Shown piece after piece: positions 26,245-42,745 of a stretch of DNA of 64,000 nt. The position numbers were made by a program, and so were the translations under genes. Each line of letters begins with the position of its first letter. Position 1 is the stretch's first letter. The stretch is taken from IMG/VR virus record IMGVR_UViG_3300023202_000247, positions 257,462 to 321,461 of that record. One strand, 5' to 3'. The notes under the pieces were generated by a model, which was not told the DNA's origin, did no database searches, and was given only the letters and a program-made list of their open reading frames with translations.

Positions 26245-28347
26245 GTGGGATCAAATCTCATAAAAGAGATTCCTGGGAAGGAGCTGCGAGACTATGTAAA
26301 ATCTTCTCGTGCATGTAACTTTACCAATGCTGGTGCGGCTTTGGAAGCAAAATTTGGACTATTGGATTTGGAGTTTGATAGCGTTGAAGGAGCAGAGCGC
26401 GTTGCTTTGAAATTACGTCGTCAAGGTGGTAATGGTAAAGTAGCAATAGTTTGTGGCTCAAATGTGGTTGAACAAAATGTTATAAGCAATAAAAGCCAAT
26501 TTCTATCTATAGAGTTGGATAAAAGTTTTGTTAGTATAAAACGCCCAGTTAAAAGCTCTGGAGTTTTAGAAGTCTTATCTGTTTTAGTTTATTCAGATAA
26601 AGACATTGGTATCGTTGAACAAAAAAACTGGAAGTCTATTTTAAGTGGTTGTAAGTACCGTAATATGAAGATAGTAGGCAATAGGTTGCTTGCATCAGAA
26701 GGGGCAAAAATAGAATCGAAAGGTATTGATTTTATCGATACCAACCCTCCCAATTGTGCGCGTATTGATGAATCCGGGGCACAATTTGTATCCAGTTGTG
26801 AAATTTTTGATATCGGAATTTCTAGAATTGGAGGTAAAAAGAAGTCCATTAACATTCCACATTTTGATGCTCCCCTTGATATCGGACCTCCGGTTGAGAC
26901 GATGGATGCGGAACCCAAAGTTATACCAAGCAAGATAAATATCAAAGCACCGGTTAAAAACCCCACTCCTTCATCCAAAGGCGCTAGTGTTTTGTTTGAT
27001 TCCGGTAAAACTGGTTTCTCTATGGAGGCTGTCAAAACAGCTGGTGGTGCAAGTATACTAAACTCTAAATCTATAAAAATTGGTCATCGAGGATGTATAT
27101 CTCTTCCTGTTAGTACTATAGAGGCCAATACACCTTATATAATTATCGCCGAGGCTGTAAGTTCCCGTGGCAATGGTAAGATGATTGCTTATATAGGTGA
27201 AGAAGCTTATAAGGCTGCATTTGGAGTTGCCAATGCAATGAAGAGAAATGTCCACTTCAATGTAAAAAGCGGTGCGCCTCCGGCTCAGGGTTCGTTTCGT
27301 TTGTTTATAGAAAGGCCACAGTCTTCAACTGGAGAAATAATTATAACAAGAATAATGTTGATAAATGCTCCGGCAACTGAGGAGAAGACAACTCAAATCC
27401 TTAGAAGAACTTTGCCACAAAACAACATAAATCTAAATCGTTCTTCGCGGAGTTTGTATACTGATGATATTGCTGACAAAACCATGGCGGCTTTGAAGAG
27501 GTATGCTAGGTTTGCCAATGATGTAAACCCACCAGCAAAATTTGGTGTGTCTGGAACAATTGACATTTCAACAGCTTGTGGAATGAGTTGGTTTAGCAAA
27601 GTGAAAACATTTTTTCCGGACATCAAGCACATTCAAGGCGGCAAACCCGATTTGTTCATAGGAAGACCGGGCGCTTTGCGCCCAGCAAAAAACCTTCTCG
27701 TGGAAGAATTTTTCGGTGAGCTTTCAGATGAAGATATAAAACATGTAAAAAATGCTAATCATGTTTTTACTACATCAGAAAGTAATATTATGTTTTTATC
27801 AAAACATAATAAAAATGTAGAGATTATTAGCAAAGTGTGGCCGGTTATTACTGCTCAAAGGGTTCTTCCAGTAAACTTTAAATATGTTTTAGTTTTCAAC
27901 AGAAGTTTCAAGAACACCGGCATTGTAGTGAAGTCACATATAGATGGAATGCCTAAATTTGTTGTTGCTGGCGCACGAGGTGTACTTCCACCATTTTGTT
28001 TTTTAACCAACGAATATCTCAACTATTCTAATCTGATAGATTTAATTGGGCGCGCTTCTTGTATCGTTGATTTACCACAAATGAATGATTACAACAGCGC
28101 TGTGTTGAATTTGGCACATAATATCGGTGTACCCATAGTTACTACAAATTGGTGGGGTATGCACAAAGATAATGTTCAATATATTTCCTCTGAAGTGCAT
28201 AAAGGAATAGCATGCCCAAATCCAAAAGAGTTGAGGGAAGCCATTGAAAAAGCTTTAACTCAAGAGAAAAAACCTACTGCTTTGATTGCAAATCAAAACA
28301 AATTATTGCATCAAACCATGGCTAAGCTTCTAAAAACTCAACTATAA
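26245..28347 (+). CDS. Large hypothetical protein; beta-rich N-terminal part, C-terminal degenerate GT-B-like region
   Basis: 700-aa ORF; C-terminal LIDLIGRASCIVDL...AHNIGVPIVTT resembles the GT-B second domain. Confidence 0.4.
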   Translation: MGSNLIKEIPGKELRDYVKSSRACNFTNAGAALEAKFGLLDLEFDSVEGAERVALKLRRQGGNGKVAIVCGSNVVEQNVISNKSQFLSIELDKSFVSIKRPVKSSGVLEVLSVLVYSDKDIGIVEQKNWKSILSGCKYRNMKIVGNRLLASEGAKIESKGIDFIDTNPPNCARIDESGAQFVSSCEIFDIGISRIGGKKKSINIPHFDAPLDIGPPVETMDAEPKVIPSKINIKAPVKNPTPSSKGASVLFDSGKTGFSMEAVKTAGGASILNSKSIKIGHRGCISLPVSTIEANTPYIIIAEAVSSRGNGKMIAYIGEEAYKAAFGVANAMKRNVHFNVKSGAPPAQGSFRLFIERPQSSTGEIIITRIMLINAPATEEKTTQILRRTLPQNNINLNRSSRSLYTDDIADKTMAALKRYARFANDVNPPAKFGVSGTIDISTACGMSWFSKVKTFFPDIKHIQGGKPDLFIGRPGALRPAKNLLVEEFFGELSDEDIKHVKNANHVFTTSESNIMFLSKHNKNVEIISKVWPVITAQRVLPVNFKYVLVFNRSFKNTGIVVKSHIDGMPKFVVAGARGVLPPFCFLTNEYLNYSNLIDLIGRASCIVDLPQMNDYNSAVLNLAHNIGVPIVTTNWWGMHKDNVQYISSEVHKGIACPNPKELREAIEKALTQEKKPTALIANQNKLLHQTMAKLLKTQL

Positions 28348-29273
28348 GCTTCTATCATTTTGCGATACATTCTGTCGTAAGATATGACATGGAAAAGACC
28401 GTCAGGTTTTTCTAGATTTTCCAATACAGATGTTTTCATGGCCTCATATTTTTGGCCGTTGAACTCATTCATTACTTTTGTTAAAGCATGCCAATTAACC
28501 TTGATATTTTTGCCATTCTTTTGAACGAATTGTCGTAAGTCAATGTATGAGTTTGGAGCAAAGCCTAAGTCGTTTATATTGTAACAGCCGATGTATAAAG
28601 GGCAAGCCCCTCCAAACCAAGCCTCTGGCAGTTTCTCTGTAAAGTAGTTATGAGAAAATTGTTGATGATAACAGTTTTCAGTACATATGGTAAATTTGGC
28701 ATCTTTCAATATTGACATTTTGTTTGGTACGGAACCTTTATAATAAGGTTTTTTCATGGGAATTTGTCCATACCATGACACATTCCAATCTTTGTGGCGA
28801 TGAAACATGTCCGCAAGCATGGTTCTCAGCGTGTATATTTCCGAGATGTGCTTGGATGATTTTCTGCTTGCTATAAATACTATTTCATTTTTTCGTTGAT
28901 TCCAGGGCTTGGACCAATTTTGAGCTATAGCATCCTTAGATGGTGGAAATTTACAACTTGGATGATTAATTTCAATAACTTTTTGTTTTATGCTGTGGCT
29001 TGTAATAGCTTTTGACGCCCATGTGAATATGTATTTGAATCGTTTCAAATATTCTACACGGTAATCTGGTTCATGAACACAGCGCGGCTCTATTACCAAC
29101 GCAGAGTCATCAGGTTGAGGATTCCGCAAATAATACCAACTCATTGTAATATTGTGTTTTTTACCATCACGTCTATTTGATAACCACACGATGCCATTTT
29201 CATCTTCATAATGGACTACTGGAGATTTTTTGTGGGGCCCGTAAATAAGGTTAATCTCTACTTTTTTGCTCAT
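28338..29273 (-). CDS. Glycosyltransferase family 10 (alpha-1,3/4-fucosyltransferase-like)
   Basis: KFTICTENC...NYFTEKLPEAWFGGACPLYIG matches the GT10 alpha-3-FucT motif. Confidence 0.8.
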   Translation of the reverse strand: MSKKVEINLIYGPHKKSPVVHYEDENGIVWLSNRRDGKKHNITMSWYYLRNPQPDDSALVIEPRCVHEPDYRVEYLKRFKYIFTWASKAITSHSIKQKVIEINHPSCKFPPSKDAIAQNWSKPWNQRKNEIVFIASRKSSKHISEIYTLRTMLADMFHRHKDWNVSWYGQIPMKKPYYKGSVPNKMSILKDAKFTICTENCYHQQFSHNYFTEKLPEAWFGGACPLYIGCYNINDLGFAPNSYIDLRQFVQKNGKNIKVNWHALTKVMNEFNGQKYEAMKTSVLENLEKPDGLFHVISYDRMYRKMIEAYS

Positions 29274-29294: not shown

Positions 29295-30047
29295 ATGGTA
29301 TCTGGTGCAAAAATTGTTGTCATGATTCCAAGTTACAACAATTGTAAATGGTATGACAAAAATCTGATGTCGGTTTTGTCTCAAGATTATGACAACTTTC
29401 GTATTATTTATACTGACGATTGCTCGACAGATAAAACCGGTGAGTTGGTTAAGAGTTTTCTGGAAAAGAAAAACTATTTTGATAAAGTAACTTTTATTCA
29501 AAATACTGAACGTTTGGGGGCATTGGCTAATCAATATAATATGGTTCATTCTTGTGATGATGATGAGATAGTTATTACTTTAGATGGTGATGATTGGTTT
29601 GCCAACGCACAAGTTTTACGTCGAGTTGAACAAGCTTATGCAGATGGCAAAACTTGGATCACATATGGGCAATACAAAGATTGGCCGTCTGGAGGGCGCG
29701 GATGTTCCAGGCCCATACCAAAAGAGATAATTGATAAAAATTGTTATCGTACATCACCATGGTGTACTTCTCACTTGAGAACATTTTACGCATGGCTGTT
29801 CAAGAAAATCAAGCGAGAAGATTTGATGGATGGCAATGGTCAGTTTTACCAAATGACTGGTGACTTGTTTACAATGTTTCCCATGATTGAAATGGCTGGG
29901 TATCATTCTAAATACATTGATGATATTTTGTATATTTACAATGTGTCAAATCCTATAAATGATAGTAAAGTTAATAGGACGAGGCAGATAGATTTAGAAC
30001 GAATTGCTCGTTACAAACCACGTTATACACCTCTAAAAGAAAAATGA
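29295..30047 (+). CDS. Glycosyltransferase, GT2
   Basis: VMIPSYN, IIYTDDCSTD, ITLDGDDW. Confidence 0.9.
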   Translation: MVSGAKIVVMIPSYNNCKWYDKNLMSVLSQDYDNFRIIYTDDCSTDKTGELVKSFLEKKNYFDKVTFIQNTERLGALANQYNMVHSCDDDEIVITLDGDDWFANAQVLRRVEQAYADGKTWITYGQYKDWPSGGRGCSRPIPKEIIDKNCYRTSPWCTSHLRTFYAWLFKKIKREDLMDGNGQFYQMTGDLFTMFPMIEMAGYHSKYIDDILYIYNVSNPINDSKVNRTRQIDLERIARYKPRYTPLKEK

Positions 30048-30757
30048 TCACATTTTTGGAATTGGGAAAATATGGACGTATGGGAAATGCCATGTTTCAA
30101 ATGGCCGCAGCTATTGGCTTAGCTACGAAACATAATGATTCATATATATTTCCCAAATGGGAATATGAAAATTTTTTCAACATAAATTCTTTTGATGACA
30201 ATGTTCGTGCAAGGGTACGTTCAAAATATGAAGAGTCACATTATGTTTACAAAGAGATACCTTACAAAGAAAACTTGAATATTCATGGTTATTTTCAAAG
30301 TTATAAATATTTTAATCACTGTGAAGGTGTTATCAAAAAAGAACTTTCTCCAAATTTGACTTTTCCAAAATTTGAGCGTGTTTGCAGCGTTCATGTTAGA
30401 AGAGGTGACTACTTAAAATTTCCACGGCATCATCCATTATGTTCAATTGATTATTACAAAAAAGCTATGCAACAAATGGATGTAGAAAAGTTCATGATTT
30501 TCAGTGATGATATTCCGTGGTGCAAACAACATTTTCATGGAAACGTGGAATTTGTTGAGGGAAATCCGTGTTACACCGATCTTGCCCTCATGATGAGTTG
30601 TGATCATCACATCATTGCAAACTCATCATTTTCGTGGTGGGGTGCATGGCTTGCTGGTTCGAAAAAAGTTATTGCTCCTGCCAGATGGTTTGGAGTTGCA
30701 TTGGAACGTACACACCCAACTCATGATTTGATTCCTTCAAAGTGGGTGAGACTATGA
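30044..30757 (+). CDS. Alpha-1,2-fucosyltransferase, GT11
   Basis: GRMGNAMFQMAA, HGYFQSYKYF, SVHVRRGDY, HHIIANSSFSWWGAWL. Confidence 0.92.
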   Translation: MITFLELGKYGRMGNAMFQMAAAIGLATKHNDSYIFPKWEYENFFNINSFDDNVRARVRSKYEESHYVYKEIPYKENLNIHGYFQSYKYFNHCEGVIKKELSPNLTFPKFERVCSVHVRRGDYLKFPRHHPLCSIDYYKKAMQQMDVEKFMIFSDDIPWCKQHFHGNVEFVEGNPCYTDLALMMSCDHHIIANSSFSWWGAWLAGSKKVIAPARWFGVALERTHPTHDLIPSKWVRL

Positions 30758-31138: not shown

Positions 31139-32117
31139 ATGGTTAAGGTTTTGTTTTTGCCCCTTAACTATGGTTAGCGATGTTGTCCAACAAGGCGTTT
31201 ACGATGCTTTTGAAGAGGCTGGATGTGCACTAGAGGTGTTTGATTATTTCAAAAAATATCATCAAACTAAAAACATTCAAACAACACGCCAATCATTAAT
31301 TAACATTGCAAAACGATTCAAGCCTCACTTGATTCATTTGCAAATACAGCATACATCAATCATAGATTATAAAACCATTCAAAGATTGAAAGCTGAGAAC
31401 CCACGCACAATTGTTACAAATTGGACGGGTGATGTGCGCAACTACGTCCCCCCAACTTACAAGAAAATATCTGAAGTTGCTGATTTTAATTTAATATCAT
31501 CTACTGGGCAAATCTCTATGTTTGAAAACTCTCTTGGTAAGAGGGTTAACTATTGGCAAATTGGATTCAATCCAAAGTTGTATTTTCCCAAAAACAAAGG
31601 TGGTCAATTCAAGCACGATTGTGTATTCATAGGACATCACAATTCACGCGAAAACTATCCCGGTGCAGCTCAGCGTTTGAAGGCATGTACGCTTTTACGT
31701 CGTGCATTCAATGATAGGTTTTTATTGCATGGCTCTCATTGGCCAAAAAGCCTGAGAAGCCGTGGTGCATTGGATCAAAGAAAAGTTAATGAGGCGTATT
31801 CCAACTCTCTTTGTAATATAAGCATCAGCCATTATAATGATTTAGAAAACTATTTTTCTGATAGACTTTTGATGTGTATGGCTTCTGGAAGGCCAACCAT
31901 TGCATTGAAATTTCCAGGCTGGCAATCTTTTTTCGCAGATATGGGAGATATAGTTATTGCACGAAGTATAGATGAAATTCCAAACAAAGTGCGTATGTTG
32001 GTAGACAATCCCGATCTGGCTAATTACATCGGTCAAAACGGGGCTGCCAAGGTTATGGCAGAGCATACATACTATAGTCGCATAATAGAACTTTTAGAAA
32101 TGGTCAACTTGAGATAA
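31139..32117 (+). CDS. CgeB/DUF3880-like glycosyltransferase with an apparent +1 frameshift near 31175
   Basis: AAGGAGG RBS then ATG 31139 (MVKVLFLPLNYG*); main frame 31170-32117 has YFSDRLLMCMASG and GAAKVMAEHTYYSRI. Confidence 0.75.
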
Positions 32118-32847: not shown

Positions 32848-32853
32848 ATTGAG

Positions 32854-32861
32854 TATATATA
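32854..32861. promoter_or_regulatory. Putative bidirectional late promoter core (TATATATA)
   Basis: Lies within a 16-bp gap between divergent ATGs at 32847(-) and 32864(+). Confidence 0.5.
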
Positions 32862-32863
32862 CC

Positions 32864-33505
32864 ATGGATAAATATAAGATAATAGCAGATCACTATGACG
32901 AATGCTTTAAAAAACACGGTGATACGGCTCAGGGGGCTGACTGGCCCAATGAAGAAGACCTGCAAGAGCGTTTTAAGGTTTTATCAGCAAATGTAAAACA
33001 ACAGTCAAGTTTAACAACGATATTAGACTTTGGGTGCGGCACTGGCCGTCTGTTATCTTATCTTTTGAATAATAAAAACTTTTTGTTTTTATATTATGGT
33101 GTTGATATAAATCAAGCAGTCATTGACGCTGCTGAGAAAAAATTTGATAATATAAATTTAGTAAAGTTTTATTGTCACGATTTAAGAGAAGATAATTTAT
33201 CATTGGCGCAAGATGCATCAACGACATTTGGTCATGTTATAGCCAATGGTGTTTTTACTGAAAAGCTTTCATTATCTGAAGATGACATGTGGGATTTTTT
33301 CACACAAAAAGTCGGTCTTCTTTGGAAACTTACCAAAAACTCTTTAGCATTCAATGTCATGAGTAAACACGTTGATTATGAACGAGATGACTTGTTTCAC
33401 GTGTCTTATGATAAAATGGCTTCTTTTGTTAGAACCATGACTAATGAATATGCATTTCGTTGTGATTATGGTTTATATGAATACACTGTGTACATGTATA
33501 GGTAA
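32864..33505 (+). CDS. Class I SAM-dependent methyltransferase
   Basis: ILDFGCGTG, YYGVDIN, VIANGVF; start refined to ATG 32864. Confidence 0.88.
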   Translation: MDKYKIIADHYDECFKKHGDTAQGADWPNEEDLQERFKVLSANVKQQSSLTTILDFGCGTGRLLSYLLNNKNFLFLYYGVDINQAVIDAAEKKFDNINLVKFYCHDLREDNLSLAQDASTTFGHVIANGVFTEKLSLSEDDMWDFFTQKVGLLWKLTKNSLAFNVMSKHVDYERDDLFHVSYDKMASFVRTMTNEYAFRCDYGLYEYTVYMYR

Positions 33506-35966: not shown

Positions 35967-36615
35967 GCCATCCATATATATCTGATTTACTATAAGTCAT
36001 CATTTGATGGATTATAGAAAGATAAGGAAAGTTTGATGGTATTTGTTTCATGTGAATAAATTTCAAGTCTATGTCGCCGAAATTTTTTTGGTCATATAAA
36101 TGTTTTCCGCCGGGTGCATTGATGTAACATTTGGCGGATTTCTTTTTGCAAATGTCTATAATGCGTTTACTCCCATGTAAATCACTTGTTTCCAACTCTG
36201 AAGACTTTGTAATTTTAGTTGTGATATCTAGATAATCACAAATCATTTTGATGCCCAACTCATTGAGCTGGGCAATTGTTTTGCTATCTGAGTTCAAACA
36301 ATCTGCCACCAAACTAAAAACTTTTACAAAGTATGGTGATCTTTTATAATTTAGGTCTATTGTTTTTAGTATTGAATTTTTCCATTTCCTGTCAGAATGA
36401 ATATAAGTTTCATTTATTTTTTTGTTTTGACTTGGTTTGTTAATAGAACATGAAATGTATTTCGGTTCATTACCGATCAATATTTGATTTCGATGCACCC
36501 AGCCACGTTTGATATAGTTGACATCATCGTATAAAACAAATTCATCAACTGCGTTTATCATTTGAAAATACCCAATATATGGAAAGAAATATGGTTGCAT
36601 TATAGCAAGTTTCAA
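35944..36615 (-). CDS. wbqC: WbqC-like family protein
   Basis: MKLAIMQPYFFPYIGYFQMI..VDEFVLYDDVNY; YINAPGG..LY. Confidence 0.9.
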   Translation of the reverse strand: MKLAIMQPYFFPYIGYFQMINAVDEFVLYDDVNYIKRGWVHRNQILIGNEPKYISCSINKPSQNKKINETYIHSDRKWKNSILKTIDLNYKRSPYFVKVFSLVADCLNSDSKTIAQLNELGIKMICDYLDITTKITKSSELETSDLHGSKRIIDICKKKSAKCYINAPGGKHLYDQKNFGDIDLKFIHMKQIPSNFPYLSIIHQMMTYSKSDIYGWLNSFYLE

Positions 36616-37628
36616 TTTATCCTCGCGAATTCTTTTATTGCGTTTATTATAGTTTCAATTTGATTTTTTGTCATAGAATCATTTAACGGAAAGTTTACTA
36701 TTCTGTTGTAGATATCGTTTGCGATGATATCATCTTCCAATAGCGGTTTATAGTATTTGCCGGTTATTATTCCAAGATTAGTAAAATACATATTATCAAC
36801 ATTATTGTTGAATAATACTGGTAGGTTGCCATATACTATTCCATCACTATAATTAAATAAATTTATGTTATCAGGTATGTTGTTTATTATTTGACTCTGA
36901 TTATAAATGTGCTTATCTTTGTTATATTTTTCGAGATGGGACAATATGTATGCGGCAGTTATATCGCTCATCTTGAAATTTGAAGACATAACATTAAAGT
37001 CTCTACTATGACGAAATCCGAAATTAGTTATCGACTCAACCGCTTCGTATTCATCTTTTGGTACAACTATGAAGCCACCTTCTCCGACACCAAGGTATTT
37101 GGTATGATGTAAGCTACCAAAACTATACTTTCCATAGTTACACATATTTCTACCATTTATGATAGATAGCGGTGAACTAGCATTATCAAATATGACAACT
37201 TTGTTTTTTAATGATGACCAATGTTCTATATTTGCATTTGACCCAAATGTATTTGTTATAATGATACCGTCATAATGATTACCAATATCAACAGGCAGTG
37301 TTTTCGTATCCGGATCTATTTTCTCGATGGAAACATCAAATGAATTTGATACAACTGATGATGGGAATGTGAACGATGGAGTAACCCATCGTAACTTACG
37401 TGCAGCATTTTGCTCTGCTAAAAACATCAAAACGTGTAATGCAGCTGTTCCGTTGGAAACGCATAGTATATCCTTATGATCGGAAAGTTCCAAAACATTA
37501 CGAAGTTCATTTTCTAGCATCCGTTTTACCGGACCACCATTAGTAAAATGATTCAGTTTGTTAGAGATGGAAAGCAGTTTACTAACCCGTTGGTTTTTCC
37601 AATGTTTTTTAGCTACAAAGTTAATCAT
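36612..37628 (-). CDS. DegT/DnrJ/EryC1/StrS PLP-dependent sugar aminotransferase
   Basis: FTNGGP, SNGTAALH, IFDNASS, SLHHTKYLGVGEGG (PLP Lys), NFKMSDITAA. Confidence 0.9.
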   Translation of the reverse strand: MINFVAKKHWKNQRVSKLLSISNKLNHFTNGGPVKRMLENELRNVLELSDHKDILCVSNGTAALHVLMFLAEQNAARKLRWVTPSFTFPSSVVSNSFDVSIEKIDPDTKTLPVDIGNHYDGIIITNTFGSNANIEHWSSLKNKVVIFDNASSPLSIINGRNMCNYGKYSFGSLHHTKYLGVGEGGFIVVPKDEYEAVESITNFGFRHSRDFNVMSSNFKMSDITAAYILSHLEKYNKDKHIYNQSQIINNIPDNINLFNYSDGIVYGNLPVLFNNNVDNMYFTNLGIITGKYYKPLLEDDIIANDIYNRIVNFPLNDSMTKNQIETIINAIKEFARIN

Positions 37629-37663
37629 GTTCTACAAATATGCATTCTGTGCCATATATTTTG

Positions 37664-38569
37664 ATGTTTCCAATTGTTTTAGCTAGTCATTTGGTAAGGT
37701 CTTCTAAGCCGGGGGAAATCCATGGTGGATTGTATCTTGCCAATTTTAACAATAAAAAATACGAATGTGTCATGGATTGGAGCGATCCAATAAATTGGCA
37801 AGGTCGTGGAGCAGATAGAGGTCTTCGCGGTGTATCTGTCGTTGATAAAAACACAATTTATGTACTTACATCACGCTCATTGCTTTTATTAGATGGCAAA
37901 TTTAGAGTTGTTAAAAGATTTGAAAATGAATATCTTTTGTTTTGTCATGAAACTTGTAGATTCAATAACAAGTTATTTATAGCTTCTACAGGATATGACT
38001 CGATTATTTCATTCAATTTAAATACTAAGAAGTTTGATGAGGGGTTTTGTGTTCGTGGTAAACGATTGAAAATATTCAATCCAAATCAAAAGGGACAATT
38101 GAAAGATAATGACACGATGCATATCAACAACGTTTATGCTGATGAGCGAGGTATTTTCTTTTGTGGGACAAGTTTGGACAAGTTGTATCGTATAAAAAAC
38201 AACAATGTTGAAATATACTGTAATTCTCCAAAAGGTACTCACAATTGTAGACCATTTAATAGTAGTGAGATAATATATAATGATACTAAAAGAAACTGTA
38301 CCGTAATTCGTAAAAACGGTGGGGGCGGTGAGTTCAAATTTCCAATAAAAGCAATTCCTCGTCAAAACATGACTAGTCTTCAAGGTAATGATGCCATTGC
38401 AAAACAGCCATTTGCTCGCGGATTAGTTGTTGACAAAGGTTACATCATAAATGGTTCATCTCCAGCATTACTTTCTTGTTATGACATATCTAGCAAGAAA
38501 AAGGTTAAAGAGATAAAAATGTCTAACGACATTAGGGTTACCATTCATGGTATGGCGGTGTATGAGTGA
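37664..38569 (+). CDS. Beta-propeller protein, function unknown
   Basis: Blade-like repeats (GLRGV, CHET..FNNKLFIASTGYD, MHINNV, FARGL); alternative start at 37640. Confidence 0.5.
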   Translation: MFPIVLASHLVRSSKPGEIHGGLYLANFNNKKYECVMDWSDPINWQGRGADRGLRGVSVVDKNTIYVLTSRSLLLLDGKFRVVKRFENEYLLFCHETCRFNNKLFIASTGYDSIISFNLNTKKFDEGFCVRGKRLKIFNPNQKGQLKDNDTMHINNVYADERGIFFCGTSLDKLYRIKNNNVEIYCNSPKGTHNCRPFNSSEIIYNDTKRNCTVIRKNGGGGEFKFPIKAIPRQNMTSLQGNDAIAKQPFARGLVVDKGYIINGSSPALLSCYDISSKKKVKEIKMSNDIRVTIHGMAVYE

Positions 38570-39324
38570 AAGCTTTGATTCTCACATATGATCGTCAAAT
38601 TTCTTTTGCAAATTTGGTAATAGAATCTTACAATCATTTATGGCCCGACAATGGTTTTGAGTGGATAGTACCATTCAATAATAAAAAACCAAACTTTACA
38701 ACAACCAAAAATATAAATTTTATTCAATCTCCAAGTATGATTCGTTCCACCGTAGAACGATTGCTTCACGGTTTGCCAAATGATGAATTTGTATTTTGGG
38801 CTTTTGACGATGTATATCCTCGCAAAATTGCCGACATAGATACGTTAAAAGCATCTAGAGATTTGATATACAATGGTAAACCAAACAGGTTTGATTCTAT
38901 TAGAATAGCTCATAGTATAGCAAACCCAAATGCTTGGAAAGGTGAAAAGGTTGATATCAATGGTACGAAGTACATTCATAAGAATGGTTTTGGTTCATTT
39001 TGGTTTCACCAATTCATAAATGTAAAAACACTGAAAAAGATATTTTTAAATAACAGGCTGAAACATAATTATTCTATTAGGCAGGTTAATTCGTTCCCAC
39101 CACATAAAGTGTTCATGCCCACCAAAAAGATTTGTTTCTTTGGTGAGACAGCTAGACACTCAGCAATGACGAAAAACGCTTACGATGATTTGAAGAAATA
39201 TGGTATAAAAATACCAAAAATACCATTTATGAAAACTGTAGTAATAGTTGACAATCATACTAAAGCTGGAAAAAACGAGCTACGTCTCGTAGCTCGTGGT
39301 CATAAACCACCGGTGATATCATGA
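38566..39324 (+). CDS. Putative GT-A-like glycosyltransferase
   Basis: ALILTYD..., FVFWAFDD (DxD-like); context. Confidence 0.4.
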   Translation: MKALILTYDRQISFANLVIESYNHLWPDNGFEWIVPFNNKKPNFTTTKNINFIQSPSMIRSTVERLLHGLPNDEFVFWAFDDVYPRKIADIDTLKASRDLIYNGKPNRFDSIRIAHSIANPNAWKGEKVDINGTKYIHKNGFGSFWFHQFINVKTLKKIFLNNRLKHNYSIRQVNSFPPHKVFMPTKKICFFGETARHSAMTKNAYDDLKKYGIKIPKIPFMKTVVIVDNHTKAGKNELRLVARGHKPPVIS

Positions 39325-40244
39325 CAAATTTGAGAAAAATGAAGCTGCATATGCAAAGCCCGGTACAAATGTATTACCCAGAACCGGAGTTTTTTATAGA
39401 AAAGATAAAGAATAAAGAGAGTTTTTATTTCATTCGTTTTCAAATTGAATGGTGGTTGATATTGCGTTTTGGTCTCTGGGCCATGGGGTACAAGGACAAA
39501 CCCGTTCCGAGGCATCTGTTCAAAGACAAACAGTTTCTAAAACGTTGGGGTAAAGAAGTTGTTAGGGCTTGGGATACAAAACGCAAGGGTAAAAAACGAA
39601 AATACAAATTTGATCCCAATGTATTTGCTGACTTGATTGAAATATCAGTTTCACCCAAACCTAAGGATTTTTACTTTGCATATAGTGATCGTGCATTTAG
39701 CAAGCACTTGCCGCCAAAAGCTTGGGATCATAGATGGAAGTGGACATCTGAATTTTTTCAACAATTGTTCCCGCCAGGTGAGATCAATTACTGTTCTTTA
39801 ATATTTAGAAACTGGGCACAATCTGGCAAAATTCATAAAATAATGGAAAGTGTGAAAAATGAAAACGTCTTAATCATCGGACCTTATTATTATAAAAATT
39901 TTGCTAATAAACTCGGCTTCAAGAATGCTAAATACATAGAGATACATCATACACATGCTACTATAAATATAGATAAAAAACTAAAAGAGATTCGGCGTAA
40001 GCGTCAAGAATGGTTTGGCGATGAATATGTATTTGGATTGGTGGTTGGCGGGGCTGCTGGCGCATGGCTAATTCGAAACATGTATGGAATGAAAAATACA
40101 TCTTTCATAGAGTTTGGCAGAGCTTTAGATGTTTACTACTATTATGATAAAGTTTATAAACAAATTCCACAATGGATTTGGGGAACATGGATGGAAAACC
40201 ACAAACCCAAATGGGTTGCAGAGCACAAGGAGTTGATACGATGA
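39321..40244 (+). CDS. Putative GT-D-fold-like glycosyltransferase
   Basis: YFIRF..E, NVLIIGP, LVVGGAAG, FIEFGRALD resemble GT-D-fold (DUF1792-like) proteins. Confidence 0.45.
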   Translation: MTNLRKMKLHMQSPVQMYYPEPEFFIEKIKNKESFYFIRFQIEWWLILRFGLWAMGYKDKPVPRHLFKDKQFLKRWGKEVVRAWDTKRKGKKRKYKFDPNVFADLIEISVSPKPKDFYFAYSDRAFSKHLPPKAWDHRWKWTSEFFQQLFPPGEINYCSLIFRNWAQSGKIHKIMESVKNENVLIIGPYYYKNFANKLGFKNAKYIEIHHTHATINIDKKLKEIRRKRQEWFGDEYVFGLVVGGAAGAWLIRNMYGMKNTSFIEFGRALDVYYYYDKVYKQIPQWIWGTWMENHKPKWVAEHKELIR

Positions 40245-40807
40245 GTTTAGTTATTGCTGCTATGGGTAGATGTGGTTCTACCATGCTTTTTTCTACACTA
40301 AAGAGAAAGTTTTACAAAGCCATATTTGAAAAAGATTTAGCATCATCGTATGCTGATGGTTTAATCATCAAGACTCACGACTTTGCACCTAAACAATTGA
40401 AAAACTGTAAAGTTATTTATCTATTTGGAGATCCTAGAAATATAGTTCTTTCAGCTCATACTAAAGGTAAAATTGATAGGAGAAGACATTATAGAAACAT
40501 GCATGCTCCTTTCAAAGAAGAATTTTTGCAGAATGATACATTTGTAATTAAAGATACTTTGAGGCTGGAAGATAATTTTGATTCATGGTATAAAAAACAA
40601 TCATTTCCTTTGTTGACTCTTAGATACGAAACTCTTTATGATAATCGAGACGTGTTGAAACAATTTTTGGGATTTCCTCCTATGTTGCCAAAACCCAGAA
40701 ACAGAACGACGAACTGGGAAAAGTTTCCCAGAGCTAACAGGTTGGACAAAACATATGCAGGTCTTTTGAAAAAAATAGAAGAGGCTGAAGATGCAAAAAT
40801 TTGGTAA
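40241..40807 (+). CDS. Sulfotransferase-like protein (P-loop)
   Basis: GRCGSTML, IKTHD, YLFGDPRNIVLS, LRYETL; start refined to 40241 after AAGGAG. Confidence 0.7.
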   Translation: MSLVIAAMGRCGSTMLFSTLKRKFYKAIFEKDLASSYADGLIIKTHDFAPKQLKNCKVIYLFGDPRNIVLSAHTKGKIDRRRHYRNMHAPFKEEFLQNDTFVIKDTLRLEDNFDSWYKKQSFPLLTLRYETLYDNRDVLKQFLGFPPMLPKPRNRTTNWEKFPRANRLDKTYAGLLKKIEEAEDAKIW

Positions 40808-40823: not shown

Positions 40824-40826
40824 AGC

Positions 40827-41825
40827 ATGCAAAATGCTATTATCACTGGTATAACTGGGCAAACCGGTTCATACCTAGCCAAAATTTTATTAGATAAAAA
40901 TTACAAAGTGTATGGTGTTGTTAGAAGAAGTAGTAACTTCAATACTCAACGCATAGACGATGTCTATGACCACCATAATTTAGAGTTGGTATATGGAGAC
41001 CTAGCTGATTATTCTTCGATTACCAGTATAGTAAATGATGTTAAACCGGATTTATTTTTCAACATGGCGGCAATGAGCCATGTGAGAGTATCATTCGACA
41101 TTCCAGAATACACAATGGATGTTACTGGAACTGGTGTGATTAGATGTTTGGAAGCGATACGTCGCAATAGTCCTAATACACGTTTTTTGCAGGCATCATC
41201 ATCCGAAATGTTTGGTAGCTCTCCACCTCCTCAAAATGAAGAAACTCCTTTTCATCCTCGTTCACCGTACGCCGTTGCAAAAGTTGCTGGATATCATGCT
41301 ACTGTAAATTATAGAGAAGCATATGATATGTTTGCAAGCAATGCAATAAGTTACAATCATGAGAGTCCATTTCGAGGGGAGACATTTGTAACTCGTAAAA
41401 TAACAAGAGCCGCTACTAGAATAAAATGTGGGTTACAAGATAAATTGTATCTTGGAAACTTATCGGCAAAAAGAGATTGGTCTCATGCTAAAGATGTTGC
41501 AAATGCCATGTATATGATTTTAACTTCTGATAAGCCAGATGATTATTGTATAGCTTCTGGTTATATGTACAGCGTCGAGGAATTTGTCGAGAAGGTATTT
41601 TCTAGTTTAGAGTTAAATTGGAAAGATTATGTAGAAATTGATCCTCGTTATTTTCGCCCGACTGAGGTTGATGCTTTGTGTGGAGATTCCAGTAAATTGC
41701 GAAAAAATCTAGGATGGGAACTGGAGTATGATTTTGATTCTCTGGTCAAAGAGATGGTTGATGAGGATATGAAATCTGCACAGAAAGAAAAACTCGTATT
41801 AGATTATGAGAAAGGTGACGGTTGA
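40827..41825 (+). CDS. gmd: GDP-mannose 4,6-dehydratase
   Basis: ITGITGQTGSYLA, AAMSHVRVSF, QASSSEMFG, RSPYAVAK, NHESPFRGETFVTRKIT. Confidence 0.97.
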   Translation: MQNAIITGITGQTGSYLAKILLDKNYKVYGVVRRSSNFNTQRIDDVYDHHNLELVYGDLADYSSITSIVNDVKPDLFFNMAAMSHVRVSFDIPEYTMDVTGTGVIRCLEAIRRNSPNTRFLQASSSEMFGSSPPPQNEETPFHPRSPYAVAKVAGYHATVNYREAYDMFASNAISYNHESPFRGETFVTRKITRAATRIKCGLQDKLYLGNLSAKRDWSHAKDVANAMYMILTSDKPDDYCIASGYMYSVEEFVEKVFSSLELNWKDYVEIDPRYFRPTEVDALCGDSSKLRKNLGWELEYDFDSLVKEMVDEDMKSAQKEKLVLDYEKGDG

Positions 41826-42745
41826 GATTACTGATAACTGGAAGTGGCGGATTTCTTGGTAAAAATGTCGTACCAAAATTTGCCAAAGAACAAAGTGTAA
41901 CGCTATTGACACCTCGTAGCCGGGAACTCGATCTTCTCGACCAAAGCTCTACGATGGTGTATTTCGAGCGTGAGCGGCCTGATGTAGTTTTGCACATGGC
42001 GGCTGTTTGCGGTGGTATCAAAGCAAATATGAAAGCGCCCGCGGACTTCATTCATCTCAATTCAGAGATGACTATAAATATATTTAACGCAATTAAAAAA
42101 TTTGATGTAAAATCTCTCTACACTTTAGGTTCAGTTTGCTCTTATCCTTGTCATACACCGGTTCCATTTAAAGAGAAAAACATTTGGAATGGTTATCCTG
42201 AAGCAACAAATGCTCCATATGGAATTGCAAAGAGATTGCAAATGGAGATGCAAAAGCAGTATGCAGATCAATATGGGTTGAAAGGTGCACATCTCATACC
42301 TGTTAACTTGTTTGGGCCTCAGGACCTATTCGATTTAGAAAATAGTCACGTTATTCCAGCTTTGATAAACAAATTCGTTACAGCTGTTAAAAATAACAAA
42401 CAGTCTGTAGAGTTGTGGGGTAGTGGGCAGGCGACTAGAGAGTTTTTGTATGTCGAAGATTGTGCACATGCGCTTCATAAAGCTGTCATGCTAGAATTAG
42501 ATTATCCAGAACCAATAAACCTCGGAACTGGAGAATCAATAAAAATAATTGATCTGGCAAATATAATAGCTGATATAGTAAAATATAGGGGTAATATAGT
42601 TACTACTGGTGATGTTAATGACGGGCAGCCTTTGAGGCAGCTCGACGTTTCACGTGCATATGAAACATTTGGTTTTCGTGCGCGAACCAGTTTGAGAGAA
42701 GGTTTGGAAAAAACCATAAAATGGTATGAGGAAAATTATGAGTGA
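41822..42745 (+). CDS. fcl: GDP-L-fucose synthase (epimerase-reductase)
   Basis: GSGGFLG, HMAAVCGGI.AN...P, YGIAK, NLFGP.D.FD...SHVIPALI, REFLYVED. Confidence 0.93.
   Translation: MRLLITGSGGFLGKNVVPKFAKEQSVTLLTPRSRELDLLDQSSTMVYFERERPDVVLHMAAVCGGIKANMKAPADFIHLNSEMTINIFNAIKKFDVKSLYTLGSVCSYPCHTPVPFKEKNIWNGYPEATNAPYGIAKRLQMEMQKQYADQYGLKGAHLIPVNLFGPQDLFDLENSHVIPALINKFVTAVKNNKQSVELWGSGQATREFLYVEDCAHALHKAVMLELDYPEPINLGTGESIKIIDLANIIADIVKYRGNIVTTGDVNDGQPLRQLDVSRAYETFGFRARTSLREGLEKTIKWYEENYE

What the first reader, a model, noticed from the sequence alone, without database searches (positions are those of the whole stretch)
28338..42745. Complete GDP-L-fucose route plus both alpha-1,2 (GT11) and alpha-1,3/4 (GT10) fucosyltransferase types
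Seen: gmd-fcl (40827-42745), GT10 (28338-29273) and GT11 (30044-30757). Known: Gmd plus Fcl convert GDP-mannose to GDP-L-fucose; GT11 plus GT10 together build H/Lewis-type epitopes in Helicobacter; chlorovirus PBCV-1 encodes the same Gmd/Fcl pair (A118R, A295L). Inference: the phage can make doubly fucosylated, Lewis-like structures, possibly mimicking host or environmental glycans.
Basis: partly seen in the sequence, partly recalled or inferred. Interest (0 to 1): 0.68.

Follow-up and report, generated by a model that had tools for sequence, protein, structure and literature searches.

The report
Fucose-glycan gene island in jumbo phage
A huge uncultured phage carries the two enzymes that make GDP-fucose, two probable fucose-adding enzymes and about ten other sugar-adding enzymes in one conserved 24-kb island; this is real and tidy, but similar fucose sets are already annotated in cyanophages and nothing shows that the product resembles Lewis antigens.

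Summary
Gmd (40827-41825) passes NCBI's equivalog cut-off. Fcl (41822-42745) matches only GDP-fucose synthases at the top and keeps all five catalytic residues. The GT11 gene (30044-30757) passes Pfam's cut-off and has the HxRRxD motif. The "GT10" gene (28338-29273, minus strand) gets no Pfam hit itself, but 28 of 31 orthologues do, its family profile hits only GT10 fucosyltransferases in the PDB, and the donor-binding residues are invariant.

The window is the last 64 kb of a 321-kb virus record. The four genes lie in a 24-kb island of about 26 genes, with 10 glycosyltransferase-type genes and a second route to an amino-deoxy sugar like Mimivirus viosamine.

Fourteen related 40-409 kb phage records carry the GT10-like gene. 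All 14 have GT11, 11 have gmd and 12 have fcl. In one, GT10-like, gmd and fcl form a single co-directional block.

No island protein has a membrane segment, and no flippase, priming transferase or sugar nucleotidyltransferase was found. I infer cytoplasmic assembly of a fucosylated glycan, most likely on virion proteins.

Lewis-type mimicry is unsupported. Cyanophages already show gmd, fcl and fucosyltransferases together, so this is a new member of a known kind.

The parts
21530..22684 (+). GT4/GT1-type glycosyltransferase; first gene of the conserved core
   Evidence: PF13439 at 31.6 bits, above the 28.5 cut-off. Orthologues at 40-51% identity in 16 of 17 related loci.
22924..23625 (+). GT2 glycosyltransferase (a)
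   Evidence: PF00535 at 71.4 bits; conserved at 34-48% identity.
23714..24580 (+). GT2 glycosyltransferase (b)
   Evidence: PF00535 at 30.9 bits and PF13641 at 29.6 bits; conserved at 41-57% identity.
24577..25488 (+). GT9-like (heptosyltransferase-like) GT-B protein with no Pfam hit
   Evidence: ESM Atlas: feature score 0.96 with 193 shared features, and TM 0.65 to GT9 clusters. Conserved at 24-36% identity in relatives. This is a lead, not a proof.
25485..26243 (+). GT2 glycosyltransferase (c)
   Evidence: PF00535 at 82.5 bits; conserved at 50-62% identity.
26245..28347 (+). 700-aa core protein: two beta-sandwich, carbohydrate-binding-module-like domains plus a C-terminal GT-B-like half
   Evidence: AF2 model with mean pLDDT 72.3; domains at residues 1-192, 249-374 and 437-700. 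Foldseek hits tandem CBM51 and CBM22, the CBM-like domains of Cry/Vip3, and SenB for the C-terminal part. Weak PF00534 hit at residues 624-685. Orthologues at 24-29% identity. No PDB sequence hit.
28338..29273 (-). Divergent GT10-family (alpha-1,3/4-fucosyltransferase-type) glycosyltransferase, P0001, 311 aa
   Evidence: Sequence and family evidence. AF2 pLDDT 94.6. Foldseek's top hits are the H. pylori FucT entries 2nzx and 2nzy. VIA-align gives Z 16.4 to human FUT9. N200, Y210, E213 and K214 align with H. pylori N240, Y246, E249 and K250 and are invariant or nearly so in the family.
29295..30047 (+). GT2 glycosyltransferase (d)
   Evidence: PF00535 at 71.3 bits; conserved at 49-58% identity.
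30044..30757 (+). Compact GT11 (alpha-1,2-fucosyltransferase-type) enzyme, P0002, 237 aa
   Evidence: PF01531 at 95.2 bits against a 23.9 cut-off, covering model positions 115-273. Motifs GRMGN, HVRRGD, FSDD and SSFSWWGAWL are present. It is the only GT11 in the record. A GT11 is present in 14 of 14 related records. It is 38% identical to cyanomyovirus GT11s.
31170..32117 (+). Glyco_trans_1_2 glycosyltransferase-like protein; last gene of the conserved core
   Evidence: PF13524 at 77.1 bits; conserved at 50-59% identity.
32849..33505 (+). SAM-dependent methyltransferase (variable cassette)
   Evidence: PF08242, PF13649 and PF08241. Found only in the near-identical contig L007 among relatives.
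33508..34188 (+). Hexapeptide-repeat amino-sugar N-acetyltransferase (PglD/PerB/VioB-like)
   Evidence: PF00132. Best PDB hits are PglD (1.3e-13), perosamine N-acetyltransferase and VioB.
34995..35966 (+). PhyH-type Fe(II)/2-oxoglutarate dioxygenase (variable cassette)
   Evidence: PF05721 at 80.4 bits.
35944..36615 (-). WbqC-family protein (O-antigen-cluster family; chemistry unknown)
   Evidence: PF08889 at 205.8 bits.
36612..37628 (-). PLP-dependent sugar 4-aminotransferase, closest to Mimivirus L136 (viosamine route)
   Evidence: PF01041 at 93.4 bits. PDB 7mfo, L136 aminotransferase, at E 8.1e-49; the next hit is only 1e-15. L136 function as described in PMC9614988.
40827..41825 (+). GDP-mannose 4,6-dehydratase (Gmd)
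   Evidence: TIGR01472 at 443.8 bits, above the 415 cut-off; PF16363 at 2e-123.
41822..42745 (+). GDP-L-fucose synthase (Fcl/GMER); overlaps gmd by 4 bases
   Evidence: NF047922 at 262.9 bits is the best model. The top PDB hits are all GDP-fucose synthases. E. coli residues S107, C109, Y136, K140 and H179 are all conserved in the printed alignment.
44258..45226 (+). dTDP-glucose 4,6-dehydratase (RmlB-type); entry to the second, amino-dideoxyhexose route
   Evidence: TIGR01181 at 371.7 bits, above the 365.1 cut-off.
37640..40807 (+). Four ORFs of unknown function in the variable cassette (309, 252, 307 and 211 aa); the last has a weak sulfotransferase signal
   Evidence: No Pfam or NCBIfam hits, except PF00685 at 21.3 bits against a 22 cut-off for 40172-40807.
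42726..44237 (+). 503-aa ORF of unknown function between fcl and rmlB
   Evidence: No hit in Pfam, NCBIfam, PHROGs or the Atlas.

Best explanation
The four genes are the fucose module of a phage-encoded glycan assembly line.

Proposed steps:
1. Gmd dehydrates host-supplied GDP-mannose to GDP-4-keto-6-deoxymannose.
2. Fcl epimerises and reduces that to GDP-L-fucose.
3. The GT11 enzyme and the divergent GT10-family enzyme each transfer fucose onto a growing glycan.
4. The rest of that glycan is built by the other glycosyltransferase-type proteins of a conserved, syntenic core: GT4, four GT2, a GT9-like protein, a CBM-CBM-GT-B fusion and a Glyco_trans_1_2 protein.
5. A variable cassette adds a second donor. 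An RmlB-type dehydratase, a Mimivirus-L136-like aminotransferase and a PglD/VioB-like N-acetyltransferase would give an N-acyl-4-amino-4,6-dideoxyhexose. A methyltransferase, a dioxygenase and WbqC sit alongside.

All island proteins are predicted soluble, and the phage clade encodes no priming transferase or flippase. Assembly is therefore cytoplasmic.

The acceptor I think most likely is one or more virion proteins. The giant LamG- and dockerin-bearing fibre-like proteins are encoded immediately upstream. This would parallel the self-encoded capsid and fibril glycosylation of chloroviruses and Mimivirus, and the virion glycosylation of mycobacteriophages.

Shown: gene identities, catalytic residues, clade-wide co-occurrence and linkage, and the absence of membrane and export parts.
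Inferred: GDP-fucose as the donor for both transferases, the linkages, and the acceptor.

My confidence differs by part. The fucose module works as described: about 0.8. The acceptor is a virion protein: about 0.4.
For: Gene identities:
- Gmd is above the equivalog cut-off.
- Fcl's top PDB hits are all GDP-fucose synthases, and the Ser-Tyr-Lys triad and the Cys/His epimerase pair are conserved.
- GT11 is above Pfam's gathering score and carries the motifs.
- For the GT10-like gene, the profile hits only GT10 enzymes, 28 of 31 orthologues hit PF00852, the donor-site residues are invariant, and the model is a confident GT-B fold with FUT9 and H. pylori FucT among the top matches.

Linkage across relatives:
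- Of 14 related virus records (40-409 kb) with the GT10-like gene, 14 have GT11, 11 have a strong gmd hit and 12 have an fcl-like gene.
- In G007 the GT10-like gene has left the glycosyltransferase core and sits in a co-directional run of hexapeptide transferase, methyltransferase, DegT, SDR, GT10-like, gmd and fcl.
- The core order is conserved across 16 of 17 related loci, while the cassette between Glyco_trans_1_2 and gmd varies.

Cytoplasmic assembly:
- None of the 26 island proteins has a TM-like segment, and the 321-kb record has no polytopic Wzx/Wzy-like ORF.
- Bac_transf is absent from the record held and from the four relatives searched. Wzx (Polysacc_synt, PF01943) was searched only in those four relatives and is absent there. 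Two of the four are 96% and 91% complete.

Placement and precedent:
- The island directly follows Baseplate_J, a 2226-aa LamG protein and a 974-aa dockerin protein.
- The aminotransferase's nearest solved relative is Mimivirus L136, from the fibril-glycan pathway.
Against: - No biochemical or expression data exist. No RNA run holds the locus.
- P0001 itself fails Pfam GT10.
- Fold alone does not separate it from other GT-B enzymes. T4 DNA alpha-glucosyltransferase ties at Z 16.3.
- Fcl is below NCBI's strict cut-off.
- Two relatives (G010 and G011, 91% and 50% complete) have GT10-like, GT11 and fcl-like genes but no gmd.
- Most O-antigen glycosyltransferases are also soluble or peripheral. The lack of membrane parts therefore does not exclude use of the host's lipid-carrier machinery.
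- Adjacency to fibre-like genes is weak evidence for the acceptor.
- The record held is only about 75% complete.
Confidence: 0.45

Rival explanations
1. Host-envelope remodelling. The island's soluble glycosyltransferases act on host undecaprenyl-linked intermediates. The host's own priming enzyme, flippase, polymerase and ligase then export a new fucosylated O-antigen or capsule during a long infection or pseudolysogeny. This would block superinfection by other phages or change the cell surface.
For: This is the standard proposal for comparable clusters in jumbo cyanophages: at least eight glycosyltransferase families, sporadic and polymorphic between related phages (PMC7824862; PMC9602691). 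Cyanomyovirus ACG-2014f has a cluster of SDR, SDR, aminotransferase, GT11 and methyltransferase. WbqC and DegT are typical O-antigen-cluster families. The variable cassette resembles O-antigen locus diversity.
Against: The phage clade encodes no priming transferase or flippase, so it would depend wholly on host machinery accepting a foreign glycan. A glycosyltransferase core of about 10 genes kept in order down to 24-60% identity suggests a conserved phage-side acceptor rather than variable host O-antigens. No integrase or lysogeny evidence was sought or seen in the window.
Confidence: 0.3
2. GT11 and GT10 act together on a LacNAc-type acceptor to build H/Lewis-type (for example Lewis Y or Lewis b-like) epitopes that mimic host or environmental glycans, as in Helicobacter pylori.
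For: Both transferase families involved in H. pylori Lewis synthesis are present next to a GDP-fucose supply. The two genes are 770 bp apart and co-occur in 14 of 14 relatives.
Against: Nothing identifies a Gal-GlcNAc acceptor. No GT25 galactosyltransferase is present. P0001 shares only 14-18% identity with characterised GT10 enzymes, and its N-terminal acceptor domain has no sequence match to them. Linkage specificity cannot be read from sequence. The only habitat label seen is microbial mat, where Lewis mimicry has no obvious target.
Confidence: 0.05
3. One or both 'fucosyltransferases' use a different donor, or the Gmd product is diverted. GDP-4-keto-6-deoxymannose could go to the aminotransferase (a perosamine-type sugar) or to a reductase (GDP-rhamnose or 6-deoxytalose) rather than mainly to fucose.
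For: P0001 is a divergent subfamily with a 4-residue insertion inside the GT10 motif and Thr in place of Phe before the Glu-Asn pair. PBCV-1 Gmd also makes GDP-D-rhamnose (PMC9614988). A DegT aminotransferase and a PerB-like N-acetyltransferase are present. In cyanophage ACG-2014f an aminotransferase sits right after the two SDR genes.
Against: Fcl keeps the complete epimerase-reductase residue set and is translationally coupled to gmd, overlapping it by 4 bases. The aminotransferase's closest relative, L136, works on UDP/dTDP-4-keto-6-deoxyglucose, and a matching RmlB-type dehydratase is present. As far as I know, all characterised GT10 and nearly all GT11 enzymes use GDP-fucose (my own knowledge). 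In G007 the GT10-like, gmd and fcl genes are contiguous.
Confidence: 0.1
4. DNA hypermodification. The glycosyltransferases decorate modified bases in phage DNA with a multi-sugar glycan to evade restriction.
For: T4 DNA alpha-glucosyltransferase structures tie with FUT9 as the best structural match of P0001, Z 16.2-16.3. Virus-encoded glycosyltransferases that hypermodify DNA are documented (cited in PMC12619734).
Against: Sequence identity to the T4 enzyme is only 10%, and no sequence-level hit exists, whereas the profile hits are all GT10. No thymidylate-synthase-like hydroxymethylase is present in the 321 kb held. Ten glycosyltransferase-type genes plus deoxy-amino-sugar tailoring is far beyond known DNA glycans.
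Confidence: 0.03

Closest known systems
Cyanomyovirus envelope-glycan gene clusters (Synechococcus phage S-SCSM1; ACG-2014f, genus Atlauavirus)
   Same: They are phage-encoded and pair gmd and fcl with a GT11 alpha-1,2-fucosyltransferase-type gene. They also carry an aminotransferase, a methyltransferase, a sulfotransferase and several glycosyltransferases (PMC9602691). The GT11s are 38% identical to P0002.
   Different: No GT10-type gene. P0001 has no tblastn match in 50,697 GenBank phage records. S-SCSM1 instead has NodZ- and POFUT-type enzymes. The phages are T4-like, about 200-230 kb, and the clusters are smaller and do not share this core order. DNA similarity is nil.
Chlorovirus PBCV-1 capsid glycosylation (A118R Gmd, A295L GMER, A111/114R with a fucosyltransferase domain)
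   Same: The virus makes GDP-fucose from host GDP-mannose with its own Gmd and GMER. It builds a fucose-containing glycan with its own soluble, cytoplasmic glycosyltransferases (PMC9614988).
   Different: PBCV-1 is a eukaryotic algal virus. Its fucosyltransferase domain is not GT10 or GT11, and its genes are scattered rather than in one island. Attachment to a capsid protein is proven there and only inferred here.
Mimivirus fibril-glycan cluster (R141 dehydratase, L136 aminotransferase, L142 N-acetyltransferase, plus glycosyltransferases)
   Same: The same three-step logic leads to an N-acetyl-4-amino-4,6-dideoxyhexose. The phage aminotransferase's nearest solved relative is L136, at E 8e-49. 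Both sit in a gene cluster with several glycosyltransferases.
   Different: There is no fucose route in the Mimivirus cluster. The phage dehydratase is RmlB-type (TIGR01181), not R141-like as far as tested. The nucleotide carrier (UDP or dTDP) is unknown here.
Helicobacter pylori Lewis-antigen fucosyltransferases (FutA/FutB of GT10, FutC of GT11)
   Same: The same two CAZy families occur in one genome. The GT10 donor-site residues N240, Y246, E249 and K250 are conserved as N200, Y210, E213 and K214. The GT11 HxRRxD motif is present.
   Different: Identity is only 14-16%. There is no heptad-repeat or amphipathic C-terminal tail (311 aa against about 425-478). The acceptor domain has no sequence match. 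No LacNAc-forming GT25 is present. The context is a phage, not LPS genes.
Mycobacteriophage virion O-glycosylation (Freeman et al. 2023, cited in PMC12619734)
   Same: Phage-encoded soluble glycosyltransferases lie beside structural genes and modify capsid and tail proteins.
   Different: Only one to a few glycosyltransferases, no nucleotide-sugar synthesis genes, no fucose module, and small siphoviruses.

Membership tests
GDP-mannose 4,6-dehydratase (Gmd, TIGR01472) | Full-length match above NCBI's equivalog cut-off | tested here: met
   443.8 bits against 415, model positions 2-341 of 342. The six-frame search gave 443.3 bits.
GDP-mannose 4,6-dehydratase (Gmd, TIGR01472) | [quoted passage not shown] | not testable with these tools
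   Needs an enzyme assay.
GDP-L-fucose synthase (Fcl/GMER, NF047922) | Match above NCBI's equivalog cut-off (500 bits) | tested here: not met
   262.9 bits. It is still the best model by 180 bits over the next. Orthologues in relatives score 211-478 bits.
GDP-L-fucose synthase (Fcl/GMER, NF047922) | The closest characterised relatives are GDP-fucose synthases, not other SDR sugar enzymes | tested here: met
   The top 18 PDB sequences are all GDP-L-fucose synthases (3e-56 to 2.6e-30). The first named enzyme of another class is GDP-mannose 3,5-epimerase at 1.1e-17.
GDP-L-fucose synthase (Fcl/GMER, NF047922) | SDR triad Ser107, Tyr136 and Lys140 plus the epimerisation pair Cys109 and His179 (E. 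coli numbering; roles from my own knowledge of the 1bws/1e6u literature) | tested here: met
   All five are identical in the printed alignment to 1bws, at query positions S104, C106, YxxxK and the H in NSHVIPAL.
Glycosyltransferase family 11 (alpha-1,2-fucosyltransferase type, PF01531) | Pfam match above the gathering score | tested here: met
   95.2 bits against 23.9. Only model positions 115-273 of 298 align. The protein is short, at 237 aa.
Glycosyltransferase family 11 (alpha-1,2-fucosyltransferase type, PF01531) | Conserved peptide motifs: N-terminal G-x-x-G-N-x-M-F-Q, HxRRxD, and S-F-S-W-W (motif definitions from my own knowledge and Martinez-Duncker et al. 2003, cited in PMC9602691) | tested here: met
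   GRMGNAMFQ at residues 11-19, HVRRGD at 117-122 and SSFSWWGAWL at 194-203 in the translation.
Glycosyltransferase family 11 (alpha-1,2-fucosyltransferase type, PF01531) | Alpha-1,2 linkage with GDP-fucose as donor | not testable with these tools
   Needs an assay. No solved GT11 relative was found by sequence.
Glycosyltransferase family 10 (alpha-1,3/4-fucosyltransferase type, PF00852) | Pfam match above the gathering score for this protein | tested here: not met
   No PF00852 hit for P0001 even at E<=10.
Glycosyltransferase family 10 (alpha-1,3/4-fucosyltransferase type, PF00852) | The orthologous family as a whole belongs to GT10 | tested here: met
   28 of 31 aligned orthologues (35-52% identical to P0001) match PF00852, best E 1.3e-13. 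The family profile hits only GT10 chains in the PDB: 9s6a, 2nzw, 5zoi, 7yro and 8d0o, at 4.5e-10 to 2.4e-4.
Glycosyltransferase family 10 (alpha-1,3/4-fucosyltransferase type, PF00852) | Alpha-1,3-FucT motif with the donor-binding Asn, Tyr, Glu and Lys residues (H. pylori N240, Y246, E249, K250) | tested here: met
   They align to N200, Y210, E213 and K214. E199, N200, E213 and K214 are invariant, and Y210 and T212 at least 90% conserved, in 31 sequences. Variations: Thr replaces Phe before the Glu-Asn pair, and there is a 4-residue insertion.
Glycosyltransferase family 10 (alpha-1,3/4-fucosyltransferase type, PF00852) | GT-B fold closest to solved GT10 enzymes | tested here: inconclusive
   The GT-B fold is confident (pLDDT 94.6). 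Foldseek ranks H. pylori FucT first. VIA-align ranks FUT9 first at Z 16.4, but T4 AGT ties at 16.3 and many GT-B enzymes lie at Z 13.5-15.
Glycosyltransferase family 10 (alpha-1,3/4-fucosyltransferase type, PF00852) | N-terminal-domain catalytic base (H. pylori Glu95) and Arg195 | tested here: inconclusive
   E62 and R150 are invariant in the family. R150 aligns with the Arg of FUT11 in the profile alignment. The E62 to Glu95 match is inferred from position only, and no residue-level structural alignment was available.
Helicobacter-type Lewis-antigen synthesis system | LacNAc acceptor synthesis (GT25 beta-1,4-galactosyltransferase) alongside the two fucosyltransferases | tested here: not met
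   No PF01755 match in the 321-kb record. The GT2 enzymes present could in principle supply other acceptors.
Wzx/Wzy- or ABC-dependent O-antigen/capsule locus | Priming phosphoglycosyltransferase, flippase or transporter, and polymerase or ligase, all of which are membrane proteins | tested here: not met
   No TM-like segment in any island protein, and no polytopic ORF of that kind in the record. Bac_transf was searched in the record held and in four relatives and is absent from both. Polysacc_synt (PF01943) was searched only in those four relatives and is absent there. Two of the four are 96% and 91% complete.

The most novel reading that the evidence does not exclude
A clade of 300-400 kb bacteriophages carries a self-contained, cytoplasmic virion-glycosylation machinery. 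It would combine a conserved core of about 10 glycosyltransferase-type genes, two own nucleotide-sugar routes (fucose and a viosamine-like sugar) and a swappable tailoring cassette. It would coat tail fibres or other virion proteins with a complex fucosylated heteroglycan. That would be the bacterial-virus counterpart of the autonomous glycosylation of chloroviruses and Mimivirus, using a GT10 subfamily not seen in any cultured phage.
Probability: 0.35. Interest if true: 0.75.

Novelty: new member of a known kind. Interest (0 to 1): 0.42.

Why it matters
Virus-encoded routes to GDP-fucose with matching fucosyltransferases are already known from chloroviruses and annotated in cyanophages. The bare finding is therefore an addition to a known kind, not a surprise.

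Two things are worth keeping. First, the GT10-type enzyme belongs to a subfamily of about 76 metagenomic proteins found in the word search, many on contigs of 100-340 kb. This subfamily is absent from all 50,697 GenBank phage records. Pfam's GT10 model gives no hit for this protein, although it matches 28 of 31 orthologues.

Second, the island has a rigidly conserved multi-glycosyltransferase core, a variable tailoring cassette and no export machinery, and it sits beside fibre-like genes. That makes the clade a concrete test case for whether very large phages glycosylate their own virions as giant eukaryotic viruses do. The compact soluble fucosyltransferases (237 and 311 aa) might also interest glyco-engineers.

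Tried and rejected
Searches that gave nothing:
- Megablast of 28000-46000 against GenBank phages: no match.
- tblastn of P0001 against the same set: no match.
- Direct Pfam and NCBIfam scans of P0001, and a six-frame PF00852 search of the genome: nothing. Membership had to be tested through orthologues.
- phmmer of the GT11 protein against the PDB: only chance-level hits.
- WbqC against the PDB: nothing.
- Word search for the 700-aa protein: found only itself. I took orthologues from the related loci instead. Their profile hit nothing in the PDB.
- Atlas search for the 503-aa ORF at 42726-44237: no usable hit.
- O-FucT (PF10250): nothing, but the control genomes were silent too, so this says little.

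Donor-lineage question: cellular Gmd relatives are at most 60% identical and scattered over many phyla (Solirubrobacterales, archaea, CPR, Planctomycetes). Phage-clade relatives are 58-69% identical. No donor lineage can be named.

Expression: no RNA run holds the locus, so I did not use read laying.

Tools left unused: complex prediction, because no specific binding claim is made; and the large representative protein search, because the word search and family scans settled the identities.

The 'moraphage' lineage (PMC12619734) was considered as the clade's name. It could not be tied to this phage: those genomes reach at most 307 kb and the paper does not mention tubulin.

The Foldseek matches of the 700-aa protein to Cry and Vip3 entries concern only generic carbohydrate-binding-type beta-sandwich domains. 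I do not read them as toxin homology.

Full report
**Context**

The window is the last 64 kb (257462-321461) of a 321,461-bp IMG/VR virus record. The record is classed as linear, and CheckV estimates it at 75% complete. It is clearly a large tailed phage:
- Of ORFs of at least 200 aa in the whole record, 162 of 179 lie on one strand.
- The window encodes a Baseplate_J/gp6-like protein at 8099-11338, a 2226-aa LamG-domain protein and a 974-aa dockerin-domain protein.
- It also encodes a TubZ/PhuZ-like tubulin, UvsW- and DnaB-type helicases and a ribonucleotide reductase.
- There is no nucleotide-level match among 50,697 GenBank phage records.

**Checking the observation**

All four ORFs are present exactly as stated.

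*Gmd (40827-41825).* It scores 443.8 bits on the TIGR01472 equivalog model, above the 415 cut-off.

*Fcl (41822-42745).* It overlaps gmd by four bases.
- Its best model is NF047922 GDP-L-fucose synthase at 262.9 bits. This is below NCBI's strict 500-bit cut-off but 180 bits above any other family.
- Its top 18 PDB matches are all GDP-fucose synthases, led by E. coli 1bws at 3e-56. The first named enzyme of another class, GDP-mannose 3,5-epimerase, appears only at 1e-17.
- In the printed alignment the SDR triad (Ser107, Tyr136, Lys140) and the epimerisation pair (Cys109, His179) are all identical.

*GT11 (30044-30757, P0002).* It scores 95.2 bits on PF01531 against a 23.9 cut-off. It shows the GRMGN, HVRRGD, FSDD and SSFSWWGAWL motifs. 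It is a compact 237-aa version.

*GT10 (28338-29273, minus strand, P0001).* This was the weakest claim.
- The protein has no Pfam or NCBIfam hit, even at E<=10.
- phmmer nevertheless finds three GT10 alpha-1,3-fucosyltransferases as its only meaningful PDB hits, at E about 1e-3, over the classic motif region. There H. pylori N240, Y246, E249 and K250 align with N200, Y210, E213 and K214.
- The word search returned 76 full-length relatives at 35-51% identity, many on contigs of 100-340 kb.
- A 31-sequence alignment shows E62, R150, E199, N200, E213 and K214 invariant.
- Its profile hits only GT10 enzymes in the PDB: Arabidopsis FUT11 at 4.5e-10, H. pylori FucT at 3.9e-9, mango FUT13 and human FUT9.
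- 28 of the 31 members match PF00852 individually, best 1.3e-13.
- The AlphaFold model is confident (pLDDT 94.6, pTM 0.90) and has a GT-B fold. Foldseek ranks H. pylori FucT first.
- VIA-align ranks human FUT9 first (Z 16.4, rmsd 3.5 over 250 residues). T4 DNA alpha-glucosyltransferase ties at Z 16.3, and many GT-B enzymes lie at Z 13.5-15. Fold alone therefore does not decide.

I accept P0001 as a divergent GT10-family enzyme on profile and motif evidence.

**What is really there: a 24-kb glycan island**

The four genes are not a free-standing set. They belong to an island of about 26 genes from about 21530 to 45226. It has three parts.

*Conserved core (21530-32117):*
- GT4
- GT2
- GT2
- a GT9-like protein (Atlas lead)
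- GT2
- a 700-aa protein
- the GT10-like gene on the opposite strand
- GT2
- GT11
- a small ORF
- Glyco_trans_1_2

The 700-aa protein's model shows two beta-sandwich, carbohydrate-binding-module-like domains and a C-terminal GT-B-like half.

*Tailoring cassette (32104-40807):*
- a methyltransferase
- a PglD/PerB/VioB-like N-acetyltransferase
- a PhyH dioxygenase
- WbqC
- a DegT aminotransferase
- several unknown ORFs, two of them with faint sulfotransferase signals

*Donor-supply genes:* gmd, fcl, an unknown 503-aa ORF, and an RmlB-type dTDP-glucose 4,6-dehydratase that passes its cut-off at 371.7 against 365.1 bits.

All four GT2 genes and the single GT11 gene of the 321-kb record lie in this island.

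The aminotransferase's nearest solved relative is Mimivirus L136 (E 8e-49; the next hit is 1e-15). L136 makes viosamine for the Mimivirus fibril glycans (PMC9614988). The island thus encodes a second, viosamine-like route: dehydratase, then 4-aminotransferase, then N-acetyltransferase.

**Comparative evidence**

A scan of IMG/VR with the GT10-like alignment returned 14 records (40-409 kb) with full-length orthologues. One is a 113-kb contig from another sample that is 99-100% identical to the window.
- All 14 have a GT11 gene.
- 11 have a strong gmd hit.
- 12 have an fcl-like gene.
- Misses include a 40-kb fragment. They also include two records (91% and 50% complete) that have fcl-like but no gmd.

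The core order is kept in 16 of 17 related loci, at 24-62% amino-acid identity. That order is the 974-aa dockerin protein, GT4, GT2, GT2, GT9-like, GT2, the 700-aa protein, GT10-like, GT2, GT11 and Glyco_trans_1_2. The cassette between Glyco_trans_1_2 and gmd differs from phage to phage.

The exception is informative. In G007 the GT10-like gene has left the core. It sits in a co-directional run of hexapeptide transferase, methyltransferase, DegT, SDR, GT10-like, gmd and fcl. This is a natural rearrangement that preserves the link between the GT10-like enzyme and GDP-fucose synthesis.

Cellular Gmd relatives are at most 60% identical and spread over many phyla. The phage gene is therefore not a recent host pick-up, and no donor lineage can be named.

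**How it most likely works**

*Shown:*
- The enzyme identities above.
- The record held has no NTP_transferase, and neither do the 96%- and 91%-complete relatives.
- GDP-mannose, and the dTDP- or UDP-glucose for the second route, must therefore come from the host. PBCV-1 depends on its host for GDP-mannose in the same way.

*Inferred:*
- Gmd and Fcl raise the GDP-fucose pool.
- GT11 and the GT10-like enzyme each add fucose to a glycan made by the other core transferases.

*On the acceptor:*
- None of the island proteins has a hydrophobic segment, and the record has no Wzx/Wzy-like polytopic protein.
- Bac_transf is absent from the record held and from four relatives. Polysacc_synt (Wzx, PF01943) was searched only in those four relatives and is absent there too.
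- No hydroxymethylase for DNA modification is present.
- Assembly is therefore cytoplasmic.

I favour virion proteins as the acceptor, at about 0.4, for three reasons:
- The core is rigidly conserved.
- The island sits directly after the baseplate and fibre-like genes.
- Giant viruses and mycobacteriophages offer precedents.

The main rival, at about 0.3, is remodelling of host lipid-linked envelope glycans using host export machinery. This is the usual proposal for cyanophage clusters (PMC7824862). These data cannot separate the two.

**Comparison with what is known, and novelty**

Phage precedents exist as well:
- Cyanophage S-SCSM1 is annotated with gmd, fcl, an alpha-1,2-fucosyltransferase, NodZ and a protein O-fucosyltransferase (PMC9602691).
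- 103 GenBank phage records, nearly all Synechococcus or Prochlorococcus myoviruses, carry a GT11 up to 38.6% identical to P0002.
- In ACG-2014f that GT11 lies next to two SDR genes, an aminotransferase and a methyltransferase.

What is new here is the GT10-type partner, which is absent from all GenBank phages, and the large conserved core in a clade of 300-400 kb phages.

The Lewis-mimicry reading has no support. There is no LacNAc-forming GT25. Identity to characterised GT10 enzymes is only 14-18%, and the acceptor domain has no sequence match to them. The linkages are unknowable from sequence. The only habitat label seen is microbial mat.

**Verdict**

The find is a new member of a known kind and is of moderate interest. 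A more interesting possibility, still untested, is that these very large phages glycosylate their own virions.

Noticed in passing
window 36612-37628 (-), with 33508-34188 and 44258-45226: A second nucleotide-sugar route. It combines an RmlB-type 4,6-dehydratase, an aminotransferase whose nearest solved relative is Mimivirus L136 (E 8e-49), and a PglD/VioB-like N-acetyltransferase. Together these would give a viosamine-like N-acetyl-4-amino-4,6-dideoxyhexose, as in Mimivirus fibril glycans.
   Followed up: partly
window 26245-28347 (+): A conserved 700-aa core protein with no family hit. The AF2 model shows two CBM-like beta-sandwich domains plus a C-terminal GT-B-like half, which suggests a glycan-binding glycosyltransferase. 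Its end overlaps the end of the convergent GT10-like gene by 10 bases.
   Followed up: partly
window 45246-46625 (+): A TubZ/PhuZ-like tubulin lies directly after the glycan island (PF00091 at 59 bits; PF22453; phrog_4733 'tubulin PhuZ'). It is 57% identical in relatives L016 and L017.
   Followed up: no
window 52579-56286 (+): The ribonucleotide reductase large subunit is 1235 aa long. It has an endonuclease-like insert at about residues 303-499 (phrog_4645), probably an intein or homing endonuclease.
   Followed up: no
window 20945-21505 (+): A 2H phosphoesterase lies between the fibre-like genes and the island (PF13563 at 38.7 bits). It has a sub-threshold match to the anti-CBASS protein Acb1 (25.3 bits against 27), so it is a possible cyclic-nucleotide-degrading counter-defence gene.
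   Followed up: no
window 11338-18018 and 18021-20945 (+): Giant proteins follow Baseplate_J: 2226 aa with a LamG/ConA-like lectin domain, and 974 aa with a dockerin/EF-hand-like calcium-binding domain. The 974-aa protein is 53-61% conserved in relatives and always lies next to the glycosyltransferase core.
   Followed up: partly
L005 8370-9212 and L006 68-838: In two related contigs a LAGLIDADG-type ORF is inserted between the GT2d and GT11 genes.
   Followed up: no
G010 and G011 (records holding loci L016 and L017): Two relatives (392 kb at 91% complete; 216 kb at 50%) keep GT10-like, GT11 and an fcl-like gene but show no gmd. Either they depend on host Gmd or the fcl-like enzyme has another substrate there.
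   Followed up: no
L007 (IMGVR_UViG_3300023214_000528, 113 kb): A contig from a different IMG sample is 99-100% identical in protein across the whole island. Public DNA runs from three studies also hold all or part of the locus. The same phage therefore recurs in nature.
   Followed up: no
window 32104-32865 (-) and 40172-40807 (+): Two ORFs have faint sulfotransferase signals (PF13469 at 17 bits; PF00685 at 21.3 bits against a 22 cut-off). Cyanophage ACG-2014f has an annotated galactose-3-O-sulfotransferase in its cluster, so glycan sulfation is possible.
   Followed up: no
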